Below are positions 1-49,700 of a stretch of 64,000 bases of DNA, piece by piece. A program made the translations under genes and the position numbers. Under the pieces are notes generated by a model. The model was not told the DNA's origin and searched no databases. It worked only from the letters and a program-made list of their open reading frames with translations. The DNA is from Takakia lepidozioides. Its lineage: Eukaryota; Plantae; Bryophyta. Each line of letters begins with the position of its first letter. Positions within the stretch are counted from its first letter, which is position 1. The stretch spans positions 32,612,001 through 32,676,000 of the forward strand of contig CM060731.1 of assembly GCA_030704615.1 (NCBI GenBank), given 5' to 3'.

Positions 1-10
1 GAGCCATGCC

Positions 11-2251
11 ATGCAAACAGTAGGCATGGCAAGCGAAGGGGGGATCCCTGCCGTGCGCCAATCCCCTATGTCCATCGTCGCCTCGTTGCAGGCACGCCCT
101 CAAGGTGCCCTAGTGTTCCGTAACAAGGCTCCCCGAGGCACCGGTGTCTGTAACTCTGACCTTGTACTGAAAGCCTCCATATTGCGTGGGTTGCACACTC
201 TGTACTCTCCTCCCCAGTTGCTGAAGCTTATGGCACTGGGAAGAACTTGGAACAGTTTCAGATCGATTGCAGGGCAGTGGAGACCAGTAGTCCAGGCTGA
301 GACTTATGGACAGGAGTATGAACAAGGAGGCCACCTACAGGTGAAGAAGAATGAGTGGCTACAAGGGCCCACTCTGCACAAGGGAATGCCTGAGACTCCG
401 CACAATTGCAGCCATGTGGGCAATCACATGGAGATAGGGCACTGGGATACTGGAAAAGTGTTGGGAAAATCCCTGGCAGGTTTTCAACCTGTAATGGGTT
501 CTGTTGATGATTTGCATGAAGGGGCACTGAAATCTGATCGCAGCGTTGAAAGCAACCTGACAAGGCACTTCGATTTTTTGGTGATAGGGAGTGGTGTGGC
601 AGGCCTGAGATATGCACTTGAAGTGGCTAAGTTTGGGTCGGTTGCGATTGTGACAAAGTCGGAACCTCATGAGAGCAATACAAATTATGCTCAGGGGGGT
701 GTGAGTGCAGTCTTGGACCCATCCGACTCTGTGGAAAGCCATATCCAGGATACTATTATTGCAGGGGCGTTCCTGTGTGATGAAGAGACAGTTGAGGTGG
801 TCTGTCGAGAGGGTCCTGAGCGAGTGAGGGAGTTGATGGCATGGGGTGCCCTGTTTGATCAGAGTGAGGATGGACAGCTGCACTTGGCAAGGGAAGGGGG
901 CCACTCTCACCATCGAATTGTGCATGCGGCTGATATGACAGGACGAGAAATTGAACGAGCCCTTCTTACTGCTGCTCGCACTAATCCCAACATTGTCATG
1001 TTTGAACATCACTTTGCTGTGGATCTGCTCACACTTCAGGAAGGAGCAACTGTAATCTGCTATGGCTTGGATGCTCTGGACATAAGAAATCAAAAGGTGG
1101 TGCGCTTCATTGCTGGAGTAACTATGCTGGCTTCAGGCGGAGCAGGTCATATTTATCCAACCACCACTAATCCTTTGGTGGCAACTGGCGATGGGGTGGC
1201 TTTGGCACAACGGGCACATGCAGTGGTTTCAAATATGGAGTTTGTGCAATTTCATCCCACAGCCTTGGCTGACGAGGGATTACCAATCAGGCCCGAGAAA
1301 CGGGAGAATGCTTTCCTCATAACTGAGGCAATGAGGGGTGCTGGGGGAATCCTCTACAATCAGAGTATGGAGAGATTTATGCCTCTCTATGATTCGCGAG
1401 CAGAGCTGGCACCTCGTGACATGGTAGCCCGGAGTATTGATGACCAGCTGAAGAAACGTAATGAAAGATTTGTGTACCTTGACATTAGCCACAAACCACG
1501 AGATGAAATTCTGTCCCATTTTCCTAATATTGCAGCGGAGTGCTTACAGTATGGAATTGACATAACCAAGCAACCTATACCAGTAGTTCCTGCGGCTCAC
1601 TATATGTGTGGGGGGGTGCAAACTGGGCTACTTGGAGAGACCTCAATTGTGGGGCTTTTTGCTGCAGGGGAAGTCACCTGTACTGGCTTGCATGGAGCAA
1701 ATAGATTGGCTAGCAACTCCTTGTTGGAAGCGTTGGTGTTTGCACAGAGAGCTGTGGGACCATCAGTTGACCATGCTCTGAAAGTGGGAGGTGGACAGCG
1801 AGAGACCGATGAGGCCAAGGAGTGGCCACGACCAGTTGTGGCAGTATCCTTGATGGACTTCCAGGTAGAGGAGGTACTTCGAGTTACAGCTCTCCAACGG
1901 AAGCGGCTGCAGCAAATAATGTGGGACTATGTGGGCATTGTCCGATCAACAGAGCGCCTTCAAGTTGCACAGGCAGAGTTGGGTGAACTTGAACATGAGT
2001 GGGAGGATCACTTGCTCAGAAATGGGTGGAAACCCAGTATGGTGAGTCTAGAGGTTTGCGAGATGCGCAATCTGATATCTGTGGCTAATTTTGTGGTTAG
2101 TAGTGCTTTGGGTCGGCAAGAGAGCCGGGGGCTTCATTATACCACTGACTTCCCTGAGCTTGTTGAGAGTGAGAGGCTCCCAACAATTCTCTTCCCTAGC
2201 TCTCCCATGGCTAACACTTGGATCGGCTCACAATTGGTCCATAAACTGTAA
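11..2251 (+). CDS. AO: L-aspartate oxidase (NadB family, de novo NAD synthesis), intronless, with OSB-derived N-terminal extension
   Basis: 746-aa ORF: FAD-binding DFLVIGSGVAGL, TNYAQGG, LAREGGHSHHRIVH, EFVQFHPT, ELAPRD, PAAHYMCGG, GLHGANRLASNSLLE, RQESRGLHY. Plant-type insert PTALADEGLPI. Frame is open to the window edge, so the true start could lie upstream. Confidence 0.96.
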   Translation: MQTVGMASEGGIPAVRQSPMSIVASLQARPQGALVFRNKAPRGTGVCNSDLVLKASILRGLHTLYSPPQLLKLMALGRTWNSFRSIAGQWRPVVQAETYGQEYEQGGHLQVKKNEWLQGPTLHKGMPETPHNCSHVGNHMEIGHWDTGKVLGKSLAGFQPVMGSVDDLHEGALKSDRSVESNLTRHFDFLVIGSGVAGLRYALEVAKFGSVAIVTKSEPHESNTNYAQGGVSAVLDPSDSVESHIQDTIIAGAFLCDEETVEVVCREGPERVRELMAWGALFDQSEDGQLHLAREGGHSHHRIVHAADMTGREIERALLTAARTNPNIVMFEHHFAVDLLTLQEGATVICYGLDALDIRNQKVVRFIAGVTMLASGGAGHIYPTTTNPLVATGDGVALAQRAHAVVSNMEFVQFHPTALADEGLPIRPEKRENAFLITEAMRGAGGILYNQSMERFMPLYDSRAELAPRDMVARSIDDQLKKRNERFVYLDISHKPRDEILSHFPNIAAECLQYGIDITKQPIPVVPAAHYMCGGVQTGLLGETSIVGLFAAGEVTCTGLHGANRLASNSLLEALVFAQRAVGPSVDHALKVGGGQRETDEAKEWPRPVVAVSLMDFQVEEVLRVTALQRKRLQQIMWDYVGIVRSTERLQVAQAELGELEHEWEDHLLRNGWKPSMVSLEVCEMRNLISVANFVVSSALGRQESRGLHYTTDFPELVESERLPTILFPSSPMANTWIGSQLVHKL

Positions 2252-4431
2252 GAAGAAACACACTAGGTACTGGGAGTTCTATTCTTACGAGAAATGTAAC
2301 CGGTGCAAAAGGTGCAGGCCCACATTTTGGTTGGAAGTTCAGACGGACATGGGCATCCTTGTGAGATAATTCAGCTGGCTTGAGAAGCGTGTGTCCATTG
2401 GCCCTGTGTTGTGCATGGGCAAAAGATTATGTGTGACGTTAGTTAGTTTGGATGCCCAACTTCTGCAGCCTTGTCTTGGTTGGTTGCATTGGGATGCTCA
2501 TATCTGCTTGGTTCAATTGTGTGAGCATCACCTTTGTGAAGACCTAAAAAGAGCATGTTGCGATTGTTCATAGGGGTATGCTGTCTTCCGAAATTGTGGT
2601 TCCTGGCTTGCCCAGCCTAGTCAGATACTGTGGTTTTGCCAGTTGTGGATTGATTCGTCTGTTGCTCCAAGATGATCCAATCTGGCCATTGATAATTGTT
2701 GGTTGGTAGTCCAAGTAAAAGCAAGGTCATTGCAAAGAGGGGAGTGGAAGGAGTCAGCAAGATTGCATTGGTTGGAAACTCGAGGTAGTCGTTGTCTCTT
2801 CTTCTGCAGGACGTACGTCCTCTCTTGAGCAATGTCTTTGACCATATTAATGTCCACAAGGTTGGCCCATGTTCTGATTGCTCAAAAATTTAACTCTGAT
2901 CTGATTCAACAAGCCATCTCCCCCTCACCCTTCACGATATATCTTGTATGTATGCAAATGACACCATTTCTGGGATCTTCATCTCTTAATTGATCCTGTG
3001 ATGCAGCATCATTTAAAGTGAATTGGCAACAGTCCTTAGCACATCTGGTAGGAAGCAAAGGCTGCTAGTATCTAAAAATCTCTCCAAACACGAGGCTCTA
3101 ATCTAGGTTTGTCTGGTTGAGCAAACCATTCTTCTTGATCATCCTTTCTGCTCTACCCATTAGCCCTCAATGAGCTCTAGTAAGATATTGGAGCTCTCCT
3201 CAGTATCACCGGTGTCCTTTGGCAAAGCAAGTTCTCCCTGCATAAAAAGGGTTTTTGGAGTAAACATGTTAGACACTTCAGCTGCTGGAGTGCCATCCAT
3301 GATTAACACTCTAAGAGATGGAAGAGTGCCATAGAGTTCGCTCTGTTTATCAAAGGAAAATGTGTGCTACAACCTGATAGATCAGATATATGCCTTGAGA
3401 TCATCCGGCAGTTGGGTGGCCTGAATACGTGTTTAGATCCCTTCTGCTGGAGTCTCAGCCAATTCTGTTTCCTCTTTTTCAACTACCCGGCCTGTTCAAT
3501 TGCCACTTCCTGGTCTTTTCCTGGAGACCACTGAAATTGAAAGTGTGTTATCACGATCAAACTTGTCTGTCACGGGTCTTGGTATTCATAGTCATGGGGC
3601 TTCCGATCTATGAATCTATGGGTTCACGTTGACCTCTAATGTGAAGCTGGCATTAACTCGCCTATCAGTTCCCCATCAGTTCTTCAAGGAACGCCAAGTC
3701 TCCGACGTTTTGAGCGACTGCTGAGCCACAGATTTCGACTCCCTCTAGCCCAGCACCCTCTAAGTTAACGCAATACTATCGAGCACAATTCACCCACTTA
3801 GCCAACCGCCAACCTTTACCTATAGATTCTCTCTATATGCGAAGTTCAACGCTCTTCTTGCAGGACTCTTCTTCTCTACTTGAAGAAAGAGTGTTTCCCA
3901 TGGTCACTGGATCGACACAGCTTCCTATCTGTATAGGTCCTGCAGGACCCAGCCAGTCACTTAGGATGATGCTGGGTCATCGTAACCAAAGGGCTCTCAA
4001 CTCTCAACACTGAAGGTTCCCTGGCACATGAGACAGAAGTTGGAAACTGAACTGGGTTCGGTTCGAATACAAGAAAAGAGAAGGTCGTGTTACTTATCAT
4101 TCATCGAGCAGGACATTCAGTTGCACAATTCTGGCGCTGCTAATTATTAGAGATGGAGGCGCGGTATTGATGATTATTGATGTTGAGGTCGAGTGTAGTT
4201 AGGGTCTGCGTATTAATATGTGCATCTGTACTGGTGGGTTGATGCATTCTGCTGCCTGCTTGGCTCATCCCGGCAGGTGCCTTGCATCCACCTTTCTTGG
4301 AAGCTGGTAGCTCTGAATGCCTGCCGCCTCTGTGGGTTTGAATTTTTCTTTGGGTTTTTCTTCTCGTGTGCCTCAGATTGAGTCTTTGTGTACTGAGAAG
4401 AGTAATAATCGAGTATCAGTGAAGGAGCACT

Positions 4432-7418
4432 ATGGCTGCACATACAGTTGGCATGGCACGGGTTGCGAGCCTGCCTGCCTTCCACCGCTCCCCCTTGTTC
4501 TTTATCGCCTCTTTGCAGGCATGCCAGAGAAGTATCTTCGGATTGCCTCTGAAGTCTTCCCGGGGCTATGGTGCTTGCAAGATTGGCCCCGCGCTAAAAT
4601 TGTCAAGGTGTGGGTTGTACTCTTTGTATTCCTGTCTGCGTACTCCGCACCTTATAGCAGTGAGATGTGTCTCGAACAGTTTCAGGCCAATTGCGGGGCA
4701 GTGGCGACCAGTGGAGGAGGAGGAGGTTGATGGGGGTGTGCAAGGAGGTCACCTGGAGGCCGAGAACGCTGAGTGGCCACGGCCACCCGTTGTCTCCTTC
4801 AACAAGGAAATTTCCAACACAGTGCACCTCATCGGTCGCGTGGGCCGTGACATGGAGATTAAGTACTTCGATACTGGAAAAGTGTTGGCAAAATCCAGCC
4901 TTGCTGTACCCAAGACAACCCTTACTACTGTTTCTCCGAGTGCGCCAGAGGTTCCTCCAAGCTGGTAAGCTGATTGTTCCAGTGAACAGGGAGACAGAAA
5001 ACATAGAGATGAGTTACCTAGGGCTCTGCTCCGTGTAGAAAATTGGCAAAAGGACGAGTTCAGCTCCAGTAGTTTTGGCAAAATCCAGCATTGCTGTACC
5101 CAAGATAACTCTTAAAAGACTACTACAGATGTTCCTCTGAGCTTGTAAACTATTTTTGTTCCACTGAACAGGGATACAGAGAAATAAGCTACATAAGGCT
5201 CTGTTCGAGGGAGAAAGTGTCAGTTCAGAAGATATGCTTAGCATGCCTGTGCGGTACAAGAAATCGGAGCAAATGTGTTATGATAGTCTAACGTCCGTGA
5301 CTAGATTAGAGCTTGACGAGGCTCAGTCGGTCCGTTTGGGGTGCGATTGTGAATGTCATTGTCACAGTTTATGGTACACCAAAAGTAAGATTAATAAACA
5401 GGGTGGGATGGCAGGTTGGAGTTGGAGATCTGGGATACTCTGGCCGAGAGTGCGGGGCACCACGTTAAGAAAGGGGACAAGATTTATGTTACAGGGCGTC
5501 TGGTAGTTGACTCTTACATCAACAAGAACGACATACCTCAAAAAAGTACCAAGGTCGTTGTCACTTCCATATGTCACAGGCTTTAGATAAAGCGGCATGG
5601 GGTTCCTTCTCTTAGCTGCCTCTGTGGAGAGTCTCATATACACATAAGCTTTTACTTCTGTCTTCATTTCTGTCCGTTTGACACTCTTCGGACATCTTGG
5701 GATATTGTAAGGGCCTGACAATTGGTCTTATTTCCTGTGTGTGACAGATTGTCGTGAGGACATTGAGCTTTGTGGAATCAGAGAATTCAGGTCACCCTTT
5801 CTCTAACCCTTTCTCCCTCCAAACTGGGTCTGGGGTCTATGACCACCAGGCCAGGAGCAAGCAGTTTGATCTCTGCCTCTATCCACTGACCGGTAATTTT
5901 CTGAACAGAGGGCATTAAATGGAATGCCTCTACTGAAGGACACAGATCCCTGGAAACTAGGGACCTGACTTCAGTGATTGTAAGACCTTCCTCATGCCAT
6001 CCTGCGACCGCTCAATTTTGAGGGTTTCTAGAAGATACTACCACATGCCAACTTGCCTTCATTAAAAGGCTCAAGTTGGTGGCTCTTCATATGCATGATC
6101 TCTTCACTGGCACCTTTCCGTGCCTCCAAGGTGTGGGGTAAGATGAGAAGCAGTTCAGATCCCTCAATGCTTTCTAGAGGAAATCTGGAAAGTCCGAACT
6201 AATCGTTTATTATCAAGTCCCACTACTGCGTTGAGCCACTCATTAAGGTAGTCTGTTCCCTCTTGTTCCGCCCAAACTGGGCGTGGTGTCTGTGGCCACA
6301 AGGCTACGGCAAACGTCTTAATGAATACATTCTCTCTGTCTCTGTCTCTCCTGCCCTTTCCATCTGGAGGAGTTGGTGGAGAAGGCTGTGGCCAAGCCTC
6401 AGAGAATCACTGCAAAAGCTTAAGCAGTGGTCAAATCAGCTTATTTTGTCTTTCTTATCAAGTGGGACTCCAGGGCCTCCGGCCACTTCATATTATCCGT
6501 ATTTCTTCTCAAGAAACTGCTTAGGTAATCATCTAGATATATATCAACTGTGCTTAGTAACGCAGCCTTTGTAAAATGGGAAGTGACCCTCTTGCTGGCA
6601 TTTTCAAAACAGCCATTTTTCAATCCATTGCCCAGCAACATGACAGGTGATTTAGGTCTGGTGTAACAATGGGGTCACCTTAACGGACATGCATTCTATT
6701 TCAATATGGGTTTTACTGTAGGTAGTTTTCCTGGTGGATGTGACCTGCTGTTGGTACTGTGGGTGCAGTCAAATATCCGAAAAATTCTTCAGAGCCAGAG
6801 CAGCTTTGGAATGAATATTTTGCTAACCCAAGTCAATGGTGGGATAATCGAGGCAAAAAGGTGAATGTGTTATGTTACAGCAGAGAGGCATTGTTTAATT
6901 TTCTTGTGAAGTAACGATTGCTACCATGGTTTCAATCTCGCTCTCTCCTCAACATCAGTGCAACCACTTTGGCATATTTCAGTCTCAAAGTAGGTGCTGG
7001 AGAATTAGTGGTAATAAAGGTCATGCTTTGACTAACACCAAAATTATGGCCTGAACTTCCATACCCTTTTAGATTGAATGAATACAGGATAGGAACTATT
7101 GTCCAGCAGTAGTGTAGGGTGTTTGATCTGTAAATTCAGGGTTGCCAATTGTCTGCCACTTATGGTGAGGAAAGATTGATGCATTGCTGAAGAGTCTGGG
7201 GTGAAGTGTGGGTGCAGGTCAATCCCAGAGGACCAGATTTTAAGCACAAGACCACCAATGAGGCTCTGTGGATTGATAGCTTCAAGAAACCTGCATGGGT
7301 AGATGCTCAACTGGAGAAGTTGGACTCACGTAGGCCACAGCCTGGAGGAGGGTTTTCAGGGCGTTCCCAGCCTAACAGCCCCTCCTCTTTTACAGATGGA
7401 GACCTCCCAGACTTCTGA
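4432..7418 (+). CDS. OSB: Organellar single-stranded DNA-binding protein (OSB/PTAC9 family); exons 4432-4964, 5415-5553, 5748-5790, 6769-6860, 7218-7418
   Basis: Spliced in frame at GT-AG sites: transit peptide, SSB fold (NTVHLIGRVG...WLELEIWDTLAE...VKKGDKIYVTGRL...IVVRTLSFVE) and one PDF motif (LWNEYFANPSQWWDNRGKK|VNPRGPDFKHKTTNEALWI). Confidence 0.92.
4878..5208 (+). repeat. Degenerate tandem duplication (~150 bp) of the OSB exon1/intron1 boundary
   Basis: ttggcaaaatccagccttgctgtacccaagacaac...gttcctccaagctggtaagc...gttccagtgaacaggga (4885-4992) recurs as ttggcaaaatccagcattgctgtacccaagataac...gttcctctgagcttgtaaac...gttccactgaacaggga (5075-5174). Confidence 0.85.
6170..6330 (+). mobile_element. 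3'-end fragment of LINE family A in OSB intron 3
   Basis: tctagaggaaatctggaaa...caaactgggcgtggtgtctgtggccacaaggctacggcaaacgtcttaatgaatac matches the 3' end of the LINE at 11590-11832. Confidence 0.75.
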
Positions 7419-8456: not shown

Positions 8457-8843
8457 ATGGGTTCAGAGGCAGTAAATCCCAAGGCATACCCGTTGGCGGA
8501 GGCGCAGCTCACCATAACCATCATGGACATCGTGCAGCAGGCGGCCAACTACAAGCAGCTCAAGAAGGGAGCCAATGAAGCAACCAAGACCCTGAATAGA
8601 GGCATTGCGGAGTTCGTGGTGATGGCGGCAGATACAGAGCCTTTGGAGATTTTGTTGCACTTGCCCTTACTGGCCGAGGATAAGAATGTTCCTTATGTTT
8701 TTGTGCCATCAAAACAGGCATTAGGGCGGGCATGTGGGGTGTCACGGCCTGTCATCGCATGCTCTGTGACTACGAATGAGGGCAGTCAATTGAAGTCGCA
8801 GATACAGCAACTCAAGGATGCCATCGAAAAGCTTCTGATTTGA
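8457..8843 (+). CDS. SNU13: SNU13/NHP2L1 (15.5K K-turn-binding protein of U4 snRNP and box C/D snoRNPs), single coding exon, 128 aa
   Basis: [14 protein letters not shown]...[22 protein letters not shown]...[35 protein letters not shown]...IEKLLI; ATG at 8457. Confidence 0.97.
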
Positions 8844-9758: not shown

Positions 9759-10502
9759 CTTGTCATTGGATAAAGCTGTGGAGTATTTAATCAATTGAAT
9801 GTTAAACCTATGTGTTAGTTGTATCTTCTTAGAAAGTTGACTCAGTACGTCTACACTCTCCTTTGGTTCTGGAACATTTAGTGGGGAGTTAGTAACAGCT
9901 CGTCAATATTATAGGATGTGCCTGATTGGTCTTTCTACTCATTATAAGGTATTAGACAGCATTCTTTTTGTTCCCTTTCTCTTTTCTACTTCGTTCAGGG
10001 TTTACTTGATTGATTTTACTCTGTTCAATCTTGCCTTTCTTGTGCCTTCTGTTTTGATCTTTGGAAGTTCCTTCTTTCTCTTTGATTTGGCATTACCTCT
10101 TATTTGCCATTTTTGCGGAGGTTCAGCATCCAAGTAGTGACCAGCTGGTATCTCATGGGTATCTTCAGGGTGCACAGGACCCTTCAGCTATCCTTCCAGC
10201 AAACCTCTTGGAGTGGTTTTGCTCTATTTTTGGTTCCTCTATTGATTACTAGACAATATCATGTTGCCTGCTGAGGGCTAGCTAACATTATGGCTGAGTT
10301 TTCCCATTACTCCCCCAGAAGTCCCCGAAAGTTCTATGTATGCAGATCTGCCTATGAATTTGAGCATAGTAATATGTATGATCTACACCCCATGTCACGG
10401 AGCTGCAACTTGTCACTGCTACAGATGAATGAAGTTGATGGTCCAAGACTTCGGGATTGACAACACAATGTTAAGACTGCACTCTCTATATGGCTCTACT
10501 TG

Positions 10503-11832
10503 GCTAATGTCAGCAAATGTGCAGTGGTAGCATTCAACGACAGAGGAGAGGGAGGAAGTGATCTTAAGTTGCAGTGGGGTAGCCAAGAGATCCCGGTCCT
10601 CCCTTCCTACACTTACCTGGGCGTTGAGTTCTCCTCCAATTGTAATTGGGATGCACATATCCGGAAAGTTGTTCAAACTGGCAAGGGCAAAGCTCTGGGG
10701 CTCACTAAATTTTTCCACTGCAGAGGGGTCAACTCTGAGGTTAAGAAAACCATGCTTTGTCGCGTTATTAGACCTGCCTTGGAGTACGGATCTGCTATAT
10801 GGGTTGATAACTCCAACCAGGCTAAGTCTCTAGAATCCATTCAAGTGGGGGTGCTTAAGGAGTGTATGTCAGCATGCTCCAAAACAGCCAATGTGGCTGT
10901 TCGGGGTGAGTTTGGCATTCCGTCCTTAAGCTCCCGACGAGATGAATTCAAGGTCAGATGGTGGGGTCAGCTGCAACATATGCCCAACACCAGATATCCT
11001 AAATTAATCGACTCTATATCTTGGAAACAGGACCGCCCTGTCAAACAGGCTAAGTCCTGGCAGAAGAGAGTAGAAGAGATCCTCAAGGACCTGGACCTGG
11101 ATCCGCAAGTCTTGACCCTGCTGGATAAATCTGACTTAGAGGCTGTAGTGTCCTCAGCCATGTCTGTTGCCATGAGATTGTCTGATGAAAATGAAGTTAG
11201 GCAGAAAACTTCCCTGAACTTGTTTCCAGTTTGTGACATGGGGGAGGACATCTTGGATGACCTCAAGGGTCTACCCACTCTCGGCACTAGACTGAAATTT
11301 AAACTCAGGGCAGGAAGCCTACCTTTGAACAGCAAACAGAAGCAGAGAGGAAAGGGAGAGTGCAATTGCCCGTTGTGTGGGCAATCTGAAGACAGTATTC
11401 ATTTTCTGATACACTGACCGGGGTTCTCTCACCAAAGAGACGCTCTCTTCAAATCTATTAAGGGAATTGTGCCTGTACCCCTGTTTACCAACTTTGAAAG
11501 TCTCGAGGTTGAGCCAAAAGCCCAGGCCCTCCTGAGGCCTAGTTTTTGGGCAAATCACACACAGCAGATTGATGCTTGTGTGAAGGGATTTCTAGAGGAT
11601 ATCTGGAAAACCCGGATTGATTCTTTATATGGAGGTAAGTCTTACTACCAACGTCAGCCCCTGACAGAGGTAGGTTCTGTCCCTTTTGTTCCCGCTCAAA
11701 CTGGGCGCGGGGTCAATGGCTACAAGGCTACGCTCAAACTGGGCGCGGGGTCAATGGCCACAAGGCTACGCTCAAACTGGGCGCGGGGTCAATGGCTACA
11801 AGGCTACGGCAAACAACGTCTTATGAGTACAA
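10503..11832 (+). mobile_element. 5'-truncated non-LTR retrotransposon (LINE family A), C-terminal RT region plus Cys/His finger
   Basis: YTYLGVEF, RPALEYGSAIW, AVRGEFG, KLRAGSLPL, CPLCGQSEDSIHFLIH*P. A single in-frame TGA at 11415-11417 replaces the expected Cys and the frame continues into ORF 11469. Candidate 8-bp TSD TCTACTTG at 10495-10502 and 11833-11840. Confidence 0.88.
11694..11807 (+). repeat. 3 x 38-bp tandem repeat at the LINE 3' end
   Basis: gctcaaactgggcgcggggtcaatggc(t/c)acaaggctac at 11694, 11732 and 11770. Confidence 0.95.
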
Positions 11833-46700: not shown

Positions 46701-49700
46701 CCAAAATTATCGAAGGCCTGCACAGTCGTAGTGTCTGTCAATCATATCGATGTCAACATTCTAGTTTTCTCTCTAAGTAAGGCAATCAAGAAGCTGCAAA
46801 ATGGCAGAGCGGTGGACATTTCAGGACTTCAGAGTGAATTCATCAAGCATGCTGCACCTACTTTAGCCCCTTTTATAGCTAACCTCTTCAATGAGGTGGT
46901 GCAACGGGGCTTTCCAACAGAGTGGACAAAGAGCATCACCCACCCACTTTTTAAGAGCGGTGACAGGCTCGCACCGACAAACTATCGTACTATCATGGTG
47001 TCCTCATTACTTGCTAAACTGTTTGGGGCAGTAGTGGCCATGGAACTGGATGATTGGGCTGAGTACTCTCGCATTCGTGCTGAGGGACAGGCTGGTTTCC
47101 GTCGAAACTGATCCACTATTGACCACATCTTCACTCTTCAAGTTATGGTGGAAAGTGCACGCTATGACAAAAGAATGGTCTATGTTTGCTTCTAGGACTT
47201 TCACAAAGCCTTTGATTCAGTTCCTCGGGACCTTCTCTTCCAACGGCTCCATAGAGTGGAAGTCCCTCCAGACATCCTTTGTGCCATCTCTTCTATGTAT
47301 GAGATTGTCACTGGCATGGTCAACGTCGCTGGTGAATTCTCAGCCGAGATCCACAGCAACATTGGAGTCAAACAGGGCTGCCCCCTTTCACCTACCCTGT
47401 TCGGGATCTACATTGACGCCTTGGAGAATTACATATCAAAAAACCGTGGGGTTGGGGTCCCATTGGATGGGGGACCAACCCAATCAGATCTCCTCTATGC
47501 TGATGATGTTGCCCTTTTGGCACAATCCCCGGTCTTTCTGCAACGCCATCTCAAAATTTTGGAACAGTTCTGCAAAGACTATGGGATGCAGGTCAATCTT
47601 AGCAAGACCAAGATCATGGTCTTCAATGGCCAGGCTGATCGTAGATTCATCTTCAACCAGCAGGAAATTGAGATTATGAAATCATACTGGTACCTAGGTA
47701 TGGTTATCCACTCCCCCAAGTTTCACTTTGCAGCCACTGCCTTGGACAGGTTGACTAAAGGTAAGGCGGCCTCCGTCCGCCTTCAGGCCAAATGCAAGCA
47801 AATACATCTGCAGCATCCCCCGACCAAAAAGTGGCTGTTTGACACCGTCGTCAGCCCTGCTACCATCTATGGTTGTGAGTTCTGGGCACCTGGTGTCCCT
47901 GTCTCCTGGTGGGAAAAGAATTTGGAACCATTACAGTCATCTTTTCTCCAAGCAATGCTTGGCGCCAGGAGCACAACTCCATCTCAGATCCTAGGTGCAG
48001 AGTTCGCATGTGTACCATTGCAATCCGAGGCCCTCTTCAGGCTTACAATCTTTCTCCATAGATTGCAGGCCCTTCCACCCAAAGGGCTAGTGGCAAGGGC
48101 CCTCACAACATCTATGAGGCTCAAAGCTGCAGGTTTCAGGAACTCCTGGTATGCTCGAGTGGACAGTTTATTTCAACGTAACGGACTTTCTACTGCTTTC
48201 GTATTACCAATGAACCCAGATGAGGTGGACATCACATCCAGACATGACCGCAACAGACTCATTCGGAGAGAGCTTATGGAATTATATGTCAAGAGAACTT
48301 GGATGCTACCCAATCTCACGACAAAGCTCCACTTCTATCGAGAGACATTCTTGGTGCTCCGCGATGATAGAATCTTGAGACCAAATTACCTTTCAGCACC
48401 CTTATCTCCTTCCCTCTTGAGGGCATTGGGGCGGTTCAGGGTGGGTTCCCACAACCTACGGATAGAGACTGGTAGATGGGAAAACCTGCAACGGGAGGAC
48501 CGCCTATGTCCAGCTTGCATAGGGCGCAGCAAGGAAATTGAAACTGAAGAACACTTCTTCTACTGCCCTCTATACTACGAGATCCGTGGGAGATTTCACT
48601 GTTTATTCAGTGGAACCCAAACTCTCACTGATGTCTTTCACTATGAGGATCAAAAATGCGTGGCAGCCTACCTACACGAGGCCTTCACCCTTAGACAATC
48701 GCTAGAACATTAATTGTGGTTTCTGGATTTGTTCCTCTCTCATGTTTTCTTCCATTTTGTCCCATAAGCTCTACGAGCTTTCCGTGGACGTTATAAAGCA
48801 CCATTTCATTTCATTTCATTTCTCTTTAGAGGACAAGACACTACTATTCAAATTGTAATGGTCAACCTAAATTTCCATATAAAGAATTTGGTTTTACTCC
48901 ATAACAGGAGATTCTACCTGGAATATGATGTTTTGAATTATCTGACCAGGCCTGAGACAATTGTCCAGCGAATCACCGTCCTTTAAGGTGGCAGTTGCCA
49001 GCGCTCCAGGTAATACTGCAGATTTTCAGAACACGCAAGCAGAATTGAGGCACAGGGGAAATGTATTTCAGTCAGTGCAAAGAGTTGCAGGATAAGTACT
49101 GAGCCTGTTCAAGGAAAGAGAAGGGAACCACTTTGAAGGACTGTGGAGATAGTATAATTGTTTGAACATGTTAAATAGAATACATGGCAATCAAATAGAG
49201 GGTGGGGAGATAGTATAATTGCTTGAACATATTAAATAAAATACAGGGCAATCAAATAGAGGGTGGCCTGGAGTGAATAGGCAGGCTAGAGATAACCAGT
49301 TATTTCAATTGAGGCCACCAAAGCGCTGGAAATGTAGATCCGGAGGCTGGCCTCATAGGTTGGAATGATTGGTGTCAAATCTCCTCCACTTACCTCAATT
49401 TTCTGCATTGAGTCACTAAACGCATGAGACTTGTAACATTCCATGTGGCAATTTCTGCATCTGATCGTTGGAAATCATCTTTTGTTTACAAATGGTGCAG
49501 GTCCTTGAAGACTATCACAACACCAGTGTACATCTGTTTAATATATGGCAGATACAAGTGCAAGGGTACGAGTTGTTTTCCCAACCTTTATACAACTCAC
49601 CTGAAACACAAGACTTAAGTTGTCATTTGTCAAAACAGTGAGGTCCTTGGCTATTGTTGATGAAATCTGGAGATGTTGGCCACTGGCATCCCACAGTTCG

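What the first reader, a model, noticed from the sequence alone, without database searches (positions are those of the whole stretch)
11..4910. Chimeric gene: aspartate oxidase has borrowed its N-terminus from exon 1 of the adjacent OSB gene
Seen: AO residues ~1-157 align colinearly with OSB exon 1. Matching blocks (AO/OSB): TVGMA/TVGMA, SPMSIVASLQA/SPLFFIASLQA, NSFRSIAGQWRPV/NSFRPIAGQWRPV, QGGHL/QGGHL, MEIGHWDTGKVLGKS/MEIKYFDTGKVLAKS. 19 nt are identical (gatactggaaaagtgttgg, 446-464 vs 4870-4888). The shared part includes the start of the SSB fold, intact in OSB (NTVHLIGRVG) and decayed in AO (ETPHNCSHVG), so OSB is the donor. The AO body has no introns and is plant-type. Inference: a tandem OSB duplicate was invaded by an AO retrocopy that captured its promoter and targeting peptide. 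AO is plastidic in Arabidopsis, whereas OSB proteins go to mitochondria and/or plastids, so the first step of de novo NAD synthesis may be re- or dual-targeted here.
Basis: partly seen in the sequence, partly recalled or inferred. Interest (0 to 1): 0.88.

Follow-up and report, generated by a model that had tools for sequence, protein, structure and literature searches.

The report
Moss enzyme took neighbour's targeting peptide
In an early-branching moss, the gene for the first enzyme of NAD synthesis appears to have replaced its own organelle-targeting front end with an old copy of the front end of the DNA-binding-protein gene next door, a variant of a known kind of gene shuffling that probably leaves the enzyme in the plastid.

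Summary
AO residues 2-154 align colinearly with OSB exon 1 (score 266, shuffle maximum 53; 64% nucleotide identity, dS about 0.64). OSB is the donor: moss OSB orthologues carry these motifs, while ten other AO N-termini do not. The copied piece drifts at amino-acid level (branch omega about 1) yet stays open and in frame (neutral P 0.015 or less), as expected of a translated targeting peptide plus linker. The retrocopy mechanism is not supported. Every moss AO examined has an intronless catalytic exon behind one or two small 5' exons, and the junction lies a few codons inside that exon. A second moss lineage keeps an intron-containing OSB pseudogene 1.1 kb from AO, so the two genes were probably neighbours ancestrally. 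Best reading: an old local DNA duplication replaced AO's transit-peptide exons with OSB's 5' end. Plastid targeting is probably retained; mitochondrial or dual targeting is untested. The scan noted a similar neighbour-capture chimera elsewhere in this genome (s1-473290, unchecked).

The parts
11..2251 (+). Chimeric L-aspartate oxidase ORF, 746 aa, no intron in the CDS. In-frame Mets at nt 11, 26 (best Kozak context; equals OSB Met7), 68 and later.
6..23 (+). Out-of-frame 5-codon uORF starting at the ATG that corresponds to OSB's first ATG (net 1-nt loss relative to OSB)
   Evidence: sequence
11..290 (+). OSB-derived targeting-peptide-like part (about aa 1-93; first 90 aa: net charge +8, 2 acidic residues, 14% S/T)
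   Evidence: function inferred
291..472 (+). OSB-derived linker and decayed first strands of the SSB-like fold (about aa 94-154), evolving neutrally at amino-acid level but in frame
473..490 (+). Junction zone. OSB homology ends at 472 and native AO linker similarity starts at about aa 158-163. The native phase-0 acceptor would map to about nt 452-460 and is gone.
491..2251 (+). Native moss AO body exon (linker, FAD-binding domain, C-terminal domain), under strong purifying selection (dN 0.077, dS 1.03 vs Sphagnum)
2252..4431 (.). Spacer between AO and OSB, including the OSB 5' region; no OSB remnants detected
4432..4964 (+). OSB exon 1, the donor (4441-4896 is the part shared with AO); phase-2 GT donor at 4965
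5071..5216 (+). Degenerate tandem copy of 4881-5041 (end of exon 1, donor site, intron start) inside OSB intron 1; 80% identity, gaps of 2, 10 and 7 nt
5415..5553 (+). OSB exon 2 (rest of the SSB-like fold), in frame with exon 1
5748..5915 (+). OSB exon 3; start inferred from the acceptor, true 3' end not determined
   Evidence: model uncertain
6769..6860 (+). OSB penultimate exon (first half of the PDF motif)
7218..7418 (+). OSB last exon (second half of the PDF motif, stop codon)

Best explanation
AO and OSB were neighbours in an early moss ancestor. In this lineage an old, local, DNA-level duplication copied the 5' end of OSB (start codon region and the first ~155 codons of exon 1, probably with its promoter) and joined it in frame a few codons inside AO's single catalytic exon. 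The simplest route is a tandem duplication of AO body + spacer + OSB 5' end, followed by loss of the first AO copy. A short-range duplicative insertion of the OSB 5' end would give the same picture inside the window. The chimera is translated from ATG 11 or 26. The OSB-derived targeting peptide imports the precursor, most likely into the plastid where quinolinate synthase works, and processing leaves a neutral relic linker of up to ~75 aa in front of an intact AO. Shown: homology, direction, position of the junction, intact enzyme, frame retention, intronless body as the moss norm, AO-OSB adjacency in a second lineage. Inferred: transcription across the junction, loss of the native exons, which duplication route, and the destination organelle.
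For: Alignment far above shuffles. OSB orthologues keep the shared motifs (score 107 vs shuffle maximum 55 for P0121), and ten native AO N-termini show no similarity (P 0.17-0.87). Moss AO gene structures place the native acceptor 36-39 codons before the FDFLVIGSG motif, which here is occupied by OSB sequence. There are no stops and three indels of 3, 6 and 6 nt at dS 0.64. The neighbouring non-coding OSB relic collected three frameshifting gaps in 160 nt at smaller divergence. Simulated neutral survival of the frame is 0.015-0.0005 or lower with indels, and 0.03-0.09 with substitutions only. An intron-containing OSB pseudogene lies tail-to-tail 1.1 kb after the AO stop in L019, and its last exon is also in L003, L013 and L014. 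Plant AO and QS act in plastids (PMC12178909). The AO copy has lost the first Arg of OSB's N-terminus (MARV to MASE); mitochondrial specificity needs N-terminal arginines (PMC7031408).
Against: No amino-acid-level purifying selection on the AO copy (branch omega 1.8, not different from 1, P 0.73; only 73 codons). No selection against acidic residues can be shown. An out-of-frame ATG precedes the ORF. A good phase-0 acceptor (pyrimidine fraction 0.89) sits at 217/218. AO and OSB are convergent in the second lineage but tandem here, and they are not within 10 kb in Sphagnum, Physcomitrium or Marchantia. The upstream DNA that would separate the routes is outside the window.
Confidence: 0.72

Rival explanations
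1. The OSB fragment inserted into AO's last 5' intron or exon boundary and is only partly exonised. Native AO transit-peptide exons persist upstream of the window and splice to an acceptor inside the fragment (217/218, 91/92, 295/296 or 340/341, all phase 0 like the native acceptor). AO would keep its own transit peptide and merely gain a junk linker.
For: The acceptor at 217/218 has a strong pyrimidine tract and arose in the AO copy. The native acceptor is phase 0. Pairwise omega is 0.9 for aa 1-80. The upstream DNA was not seen.
Against: The first 68 codons are also open and in frame (neutral P 0.002-0.16 with indels). Homology runs right up to the OSB start codon, and an in-frame ATG with good context is kept at nt 26. 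Omega near 1 is normal for targeting peptides.
Confidence: 0.12
2. One reading: an AO retrocopy inserted into a tandem OSB duplicate and captured its promoter and targeting peptide.
For: The body is intronless and the native 5' exons are absent from the window. The 16 nt where AO homology ends (4881-4896) are also where the intron relic 5071-5216 begins, which resembles a target-site duplication.
Against: The intronless body is shared by all moss AOs examined. A cDNA truncated almost exactly at the native exon boundary would be a coincidence. No OSB 3' remnant follows AO. AO-OSB adjacency exists in another lineage. The relic is less diverged (20%) than synonymous sites of the AO copy (43%), which suggests a separate, later event.
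Confidence: 0.06
3. The OSB-like stretch is untranslated 5' sequence (or a decaying pseudo-exon) and AO starts at Met140 or Met163, giving a cytosolic enzyme, or this copy is redundant.
For: Omega is about 1 on the AO copy; there is a uORF at nt 6-23; an internal Met163 lies just before the native linker.
Against: The frame has been kept over 152 codons. At least five upstream ATGs would precede Met163. The body is under strong purifying selection with a normal branch length. A cytosolic AO would be separated from plastid QS.
Confidence: 0.05

Closest known systems
SODcp-RPL32 chimera of Malpighiales (PMC8429499, citing Cusack and Wolfe 2007 and Ueda 2007)
   Same: A protein uses the transit peptide plus a decaying piece of the mature domain of an unrelated organelle-targeted nuclear gene; in poplar, duplication left one intact donor and one chimera.
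   Different: There the recipient was freshly transferred from the plastid and had no transit peptide. Here a long-established nuclear gene replaced a working one, the donor is its genomic neighbour, and the fusion is inside an exon with no alternative splicing seen.
Nuclear sdh3 with hsp22- or hsp70-derived presequences (PMC4045975)
   Same: Presequence and a remnant of the donor's mature region captured from an existing nuclear gene; repeated independent cases.
   Different: Mitochondrion-to-nucleus transfers into unlinked host genes, not a swap between adjacent nuclear genes.
Plant L-aspartate oxidase (NadB/LASPO; Arabidopsis AO, Physcomitrium XP_024385078, Sphagnum KAH8973077)
   Same: Catalytic body 76-86% identical to bryophyte orthologues, motifs intact, single body exon as in other mosses.
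   Different: The N-terminal 155 aa come from OSB; the precursor is 50-65 aa longer before the FAD-binding motif; the 5' introns are gone.
OSB proteins (Zaegel et al. 2006, reviewed in PMC4166229)
   Same: The donor gene has an SSB-like domain and one C-terminal PDF motif, like the single Physcomitrium OSB, listed there as plastid and mitochondrial.
   Different: The AO-borne piece has only the first ~25 residues of the fold, decayed, and no PDF motif, so it is not an OSB.

Membership tests
L-aspartate oxidase (NadB) | Scores above a curated NadB model cutoff | tested here: met
   TIGR00551 533.2 bits vs cutoff 452.75; other lineage-specific NadB models score high but below their cutoffs
L-aspartate oxidase (NadB) | FAD-binding GSGxAG and active-site motifs (QFHPT, TEAxRG, LAPRD, AAHY, HGANRLASNS) intact | tested here: met
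   alignment to PDB 5kxj, E 3e-128; motif positions
L-aspartate oxidase (NadB) | Enzymatic activity | not testable with these tools
   needs an assay or nadB complementation
OSB (donor gene 4432-7418) | SSB-like domain plus C-terminal PDF motif | tested here: met
   Pfam SSB weak hit on exon 1; four exons match moss and Riccia OSB proteins, including the PDF motif
OSB (AO N-terminal piece) | Complete SSB-like domain and PDF motif | tested here: not met
   no SSB hit; invariant residues changed; no PDF
Retrocopy (retrogene) | Loss of introns that the parental or orthologous gene has in the same region | tested here: not met
   moss orthologues have no introns in the body
Retrocopy (retrogene) | Parental copy elsewhere in the genome | not testable with these tools
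   the genome cannot be searched; scan notes list no second AO, which is weak
Retrocopy (retrogene) | Target-site duplication or poly(A) relic at the ends | tested here: inconclusive
   16-nt overlap of the two OSB-derived copies, but different divergences; no poly(A) tract seen at the end of the putative insert
Chimera with captured targeting peptide (SODcp-RPL32 type) | N-terminus homologous to an unrelated organelle-targeted gene and fused in frame | tested here: met
Chimera with captured targeting peptide (SODcp-RPL32 type) | Chimeric transcript exists | not tested
Chimera with captured targeting peptide (SODcp-RPL32 type) | The captured peptide directs import | not testable with these tools
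   composition is compatible only
Chimera with captured targeting peptide (SODcp-RPL32 type) | Recipient is a gene recently transferred from an organelle | tested here: not met
   AO is nuclear with its own transit peptide in all land plants sampled

The most novel reading that the evidence does not exclude
The borrowed OSB peptide, or alternative use of ATG 11 and ATG 26, sends AO to mitochondria as well as plastids, so that the first step of de novo NAD synthesis (or an aspartate:fumarate oxidoreductase side activity) runs in a second compartment in this moss. Neighbour-to-neighbour swapping of targeting exons would then be a recurring source of relocalised enzymes in this genome.
Probability: 0.13. 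Interest if true: 0.75.

Novelty: new variant of a known kind. Interest (0 to 1): 0.48.

Why it matters
It is a clean, dateable case of a conserved metabolic enzyme exchanging an existing targeting peptide for an unrelated one, with the donor still next door and outgroups that show the ancestral gene structure and linkage. It supports the view that targeting peptides are interchangeable modules under little sequence constraint, and that local duplication between neighbours can do this without retroposition or organelle gene transfer. It gives a direct test, by GFP fusions of donor and copy, of how a possibly dual-targeting signal drifts once attached to a plastid-only enzyme. The biological consequence is probably small unless dual targeting is shown.

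Tried and rejected
The message did not call the stretch human-like and said to go on with other tools. Two word-based protein searches with the AO N-terminus (candidates of 275-875 aa and 110-350 aa) found nothing. They also missed true OSB orthologues, so the blank is weak. The window's proteins are not in the collection, so DNA upstream of nt 1 could not be fetched. The metagenome scan with an OSB alignment gave only two transcript contigs and no synteny. OSB exon 3's end and any middle exon were not resolved. Assembly artefact was rejected (64% identity, codon-structured differences). Residual similarity to native AO transit peptides was rejected. Selection against acidic residues was not significant. 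The branch model could not separate omega of the AO copy from 1 or from OSB's omega (P 0.73 and 0.33). The bacterial promoter scan is uninformative for a plant. No structure prediction was run, since only ~25 residues of the fold are present. A literature search for Takakia with aspartate oxidase listed no paper holding both terms among the 15 shown.

Full report
Observation. The window begins with a 746-codon ORF (11-2251) whose residues 188-716 are an intact L-aspartate oxidase: Pfam FAD_binding_2 and Succ_DH_flav_C, TIGR00551 above cutoff, and all active-site motifs aligned to PDB 5kxj. A spliced OSB gene starts 2.2 kb downstream on the same strand (exon 1 at 4432-4964, exon 2 at 5415-5553, PDF-motif exons at 6769-6860 and 7218-7418). 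AO residues 2-154 align colinearly with OSB residues 4-155 (score 266; 2000 shuffles: mean 29.8, maximum 53), and the DNA aligns over 14-472 / 4441-4896 at 64%. The 19-nt identity is there. Homology ends inside OSB exon 1, not at its donor site.

Organism. The AO body groups with mosses (100/99) as a lone branch beside Sphagnum and the remaining mosses; its best identity is 86%, to Sphagnum fallax. The scan index reports 5084 windows for this genome, about 315-325 Mb. Takakia lepidozioides (325 Mb, PMC13120521) would fit both facts, but this is my inference and not an identification.

Direction. A no-word-index search with OSB exon 1 returned OSB proteins from mosses, Riccia and Diphasiastrum. 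These keep the shared motifs and the SSB-fold start, and at invariant columns the AO copy is the one that deviates. AO 1-155 scores 107 against the closest OSB orthologue (shuffle maximum 55) but at background against ten native AO N-termini from mosses, liverworts, lycophytes and a fern.

The intronless body is not a retrocopy mark. Sphagnum fallax AO has exons of 36, 59 and 603 codons, Physcomitrium 81 and 603, and Marchantia seven exons. Three further genomic moss contigs have the same single body exon, with a phase-0 acceptor about 36-39 codons before the FDFLVIGSG motif. In the window that acceptor would fall at about nt 452-460, which is OSB-derived, and similarity to the native linker resumes at about residues 158-163. 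What is missing here is therefore the set of small 5' exons encoding the transit peptide, and the break lies a few codons inside the body exon. No OSB remnant follows AO in the spacer.

Ancestral linkage. In a second moss lineage (unnamed contigs, sister to Physcomitrium and Ceratodon) a decayed OSB lies right behind AO. L019 has three colinear OSB exons with stop codons on the opposite strand, starting 1.1 kb after the AO stop. L003, L013 and L014 keep the last exon at the same place. Sphagnum, Physcomitrium and Marchantia show no OSB within 10 kb. Two distant lineages with AO next to OSB is unlikely by chance, so I infer ancestral adjacency, although the orientation differs. A tandem duplication with breakpoints in the AO body exon and in OSB exon 1 produces exactly OSB-5'::AO-body, spacer, intact OSB. 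A short-range insertion of the OSB 5' end looks the same inside the window. The upstream DNA would separate the two routes. An unchecked scan note (s1-459444) places a quinolinate synthase gene head-to-head upstream.

Is the piece translated? Over 149 codons, dS is 0.64 and dN 0.44 (omega 0.69, bootstrap 0.49-1.0). That dS is about 60% of the window-Sphagnum dS for the AO body (1.03), so the event is old. A branch model on 73 codons with four outgroups gives omega 1.8 on the AO copy (not different from 1) and about 0.2 on OSB, against 0.07 in the background, so amino-acid identity is not constrained. The frame has been kept, however: there are no stops (seven in each other frame) and the three indels are 3, 6 and 6 nt. 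A non-coding OSB relic in intron 1 (5071-5216) took gaps of 2, 10 and 7 nt in 160 nt at only 20% divergence. Simulated neutral survival of an open, in-frame ORF is 0.015-0.004 at a cautious indel rate, 0.0005 or less at the relic's rate, and 0.03-0.09 with substitutions alone. This is the pattern expected for a translated targeting peptide with a tolerated linker. Caveats: the ATG matching OSB's first ATG (nt 6) is out of frame and gives a 5-codon uORF, so ATG 26 (OSB Met7, close to where P0121 starts) may be the real start; and a strong phase-0 acceptor at 217/218 keeps the partial-exonisation rival alive.

Where does it go? The first 90 residues resemble an organellar targeting peptide (net +8, two acidic residues; OSB +11, none), but acidic-residue avoidance is not significant. 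AO and QS act in plastids in plants (PMC12178909). From my own knowledge, their intermediate iminoaspartate is unstable, so plastid import is probably required if this is the only AO. Arabidopsis OSBs are mitochondrial, plastidic or dual, and the single Physcomitrium OSB is listed for both organelles (PMC4166229). Mitochondrial specificity depends on N-terminal arginines (PMC7031408), and the AO copy lost the first one and gained an acidic residue there. This weakly favours plastid-only targeting. I put dual or mitochondrial targeting at about 0.13.

Comparison and verdict. It works like SODcp-RPL32 (PMC8429499) and hsp22/hsp70-sdh3 (PMC4045975), where a targeting peptide and a stub of the donor's mature domain were captured. 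Exon shuffling of transit peptides is a recognised route (PMC7456531). It differs in that the recipient is a long-established nuclear gene that already had a transit peptide, the donor is its neighbour, and no organelle transfer or retroposition is needed. I found no paper describing this case in the held library. An unchecked note from the same genome (s1-473290) describes a similar PPR/RRF neighbour capture. Verdict: a real, old and probably functional chimera; a new variant of a known kind; interest 0.48.

Noticed in passing
window 5071-5216 vs 4881-5041: Degenerate tandem copy of the end of OSB exon 1, its donor site and the intron start, inside intron 1. Its left end overlaps the right end of the AO-shared block by about 16 nt, which resembles a target-site duplication, but it is less diverged (20%) than the AO copy.
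   Followed up: partly
L019 4319-6445 (-); L013 5374-5499 (-); L014 4001-4126 (-); L003 4203-4337 (-) and 4737-4770 (+): OSB pseudogene tail-to-tail with AO in a second moss lineage; in L003 one exon piece is inverted. An intact-looking OSB of that lineage is on another contig (L006, mRNA L017).
   Followed up: yes
L001, L002, L003, L009, L010 vs L012: All introns of the AO catalytic region present in Marchantia are absent in every moss examined, suggesting loss of several introns in the moss stem lineage (for example by cDNA-mediated conversion).
   Followed up: partly
window 6-23: Out-of-frame uORF from the ancestral OSB start codon, ending 2 nt before ATG 26; it could dampen or tune AO translation.
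   Followed up: no
window 8457-8843: Intronless SNU13/15.5K (L7Ae family) gene directly after OSB; not found near AO or OSB in any fetched relative locus.
   Followed up: partly
window 5390-5414 and 7195-7217: The acceptors of OSB exon 2 and of the last exon lack a pyrimidine tract (G-rich, pyrimidine fraction 0.28), which is unusual for plant introns.
   Followed up: no
window 10500-11417 and 47256-48713: LINE-like reverse transcriptase fragments, by inspection of the ORFs; a MULE at about 13.7-26.9 kb was already noted by the scan.
   Followed up: no
L003 669-1247, L013 1895-2332, L019 882-1316: Tandem repeats of about 150 nt in the intron before the AO body exon in the second moss lineage.
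   Followed up: no
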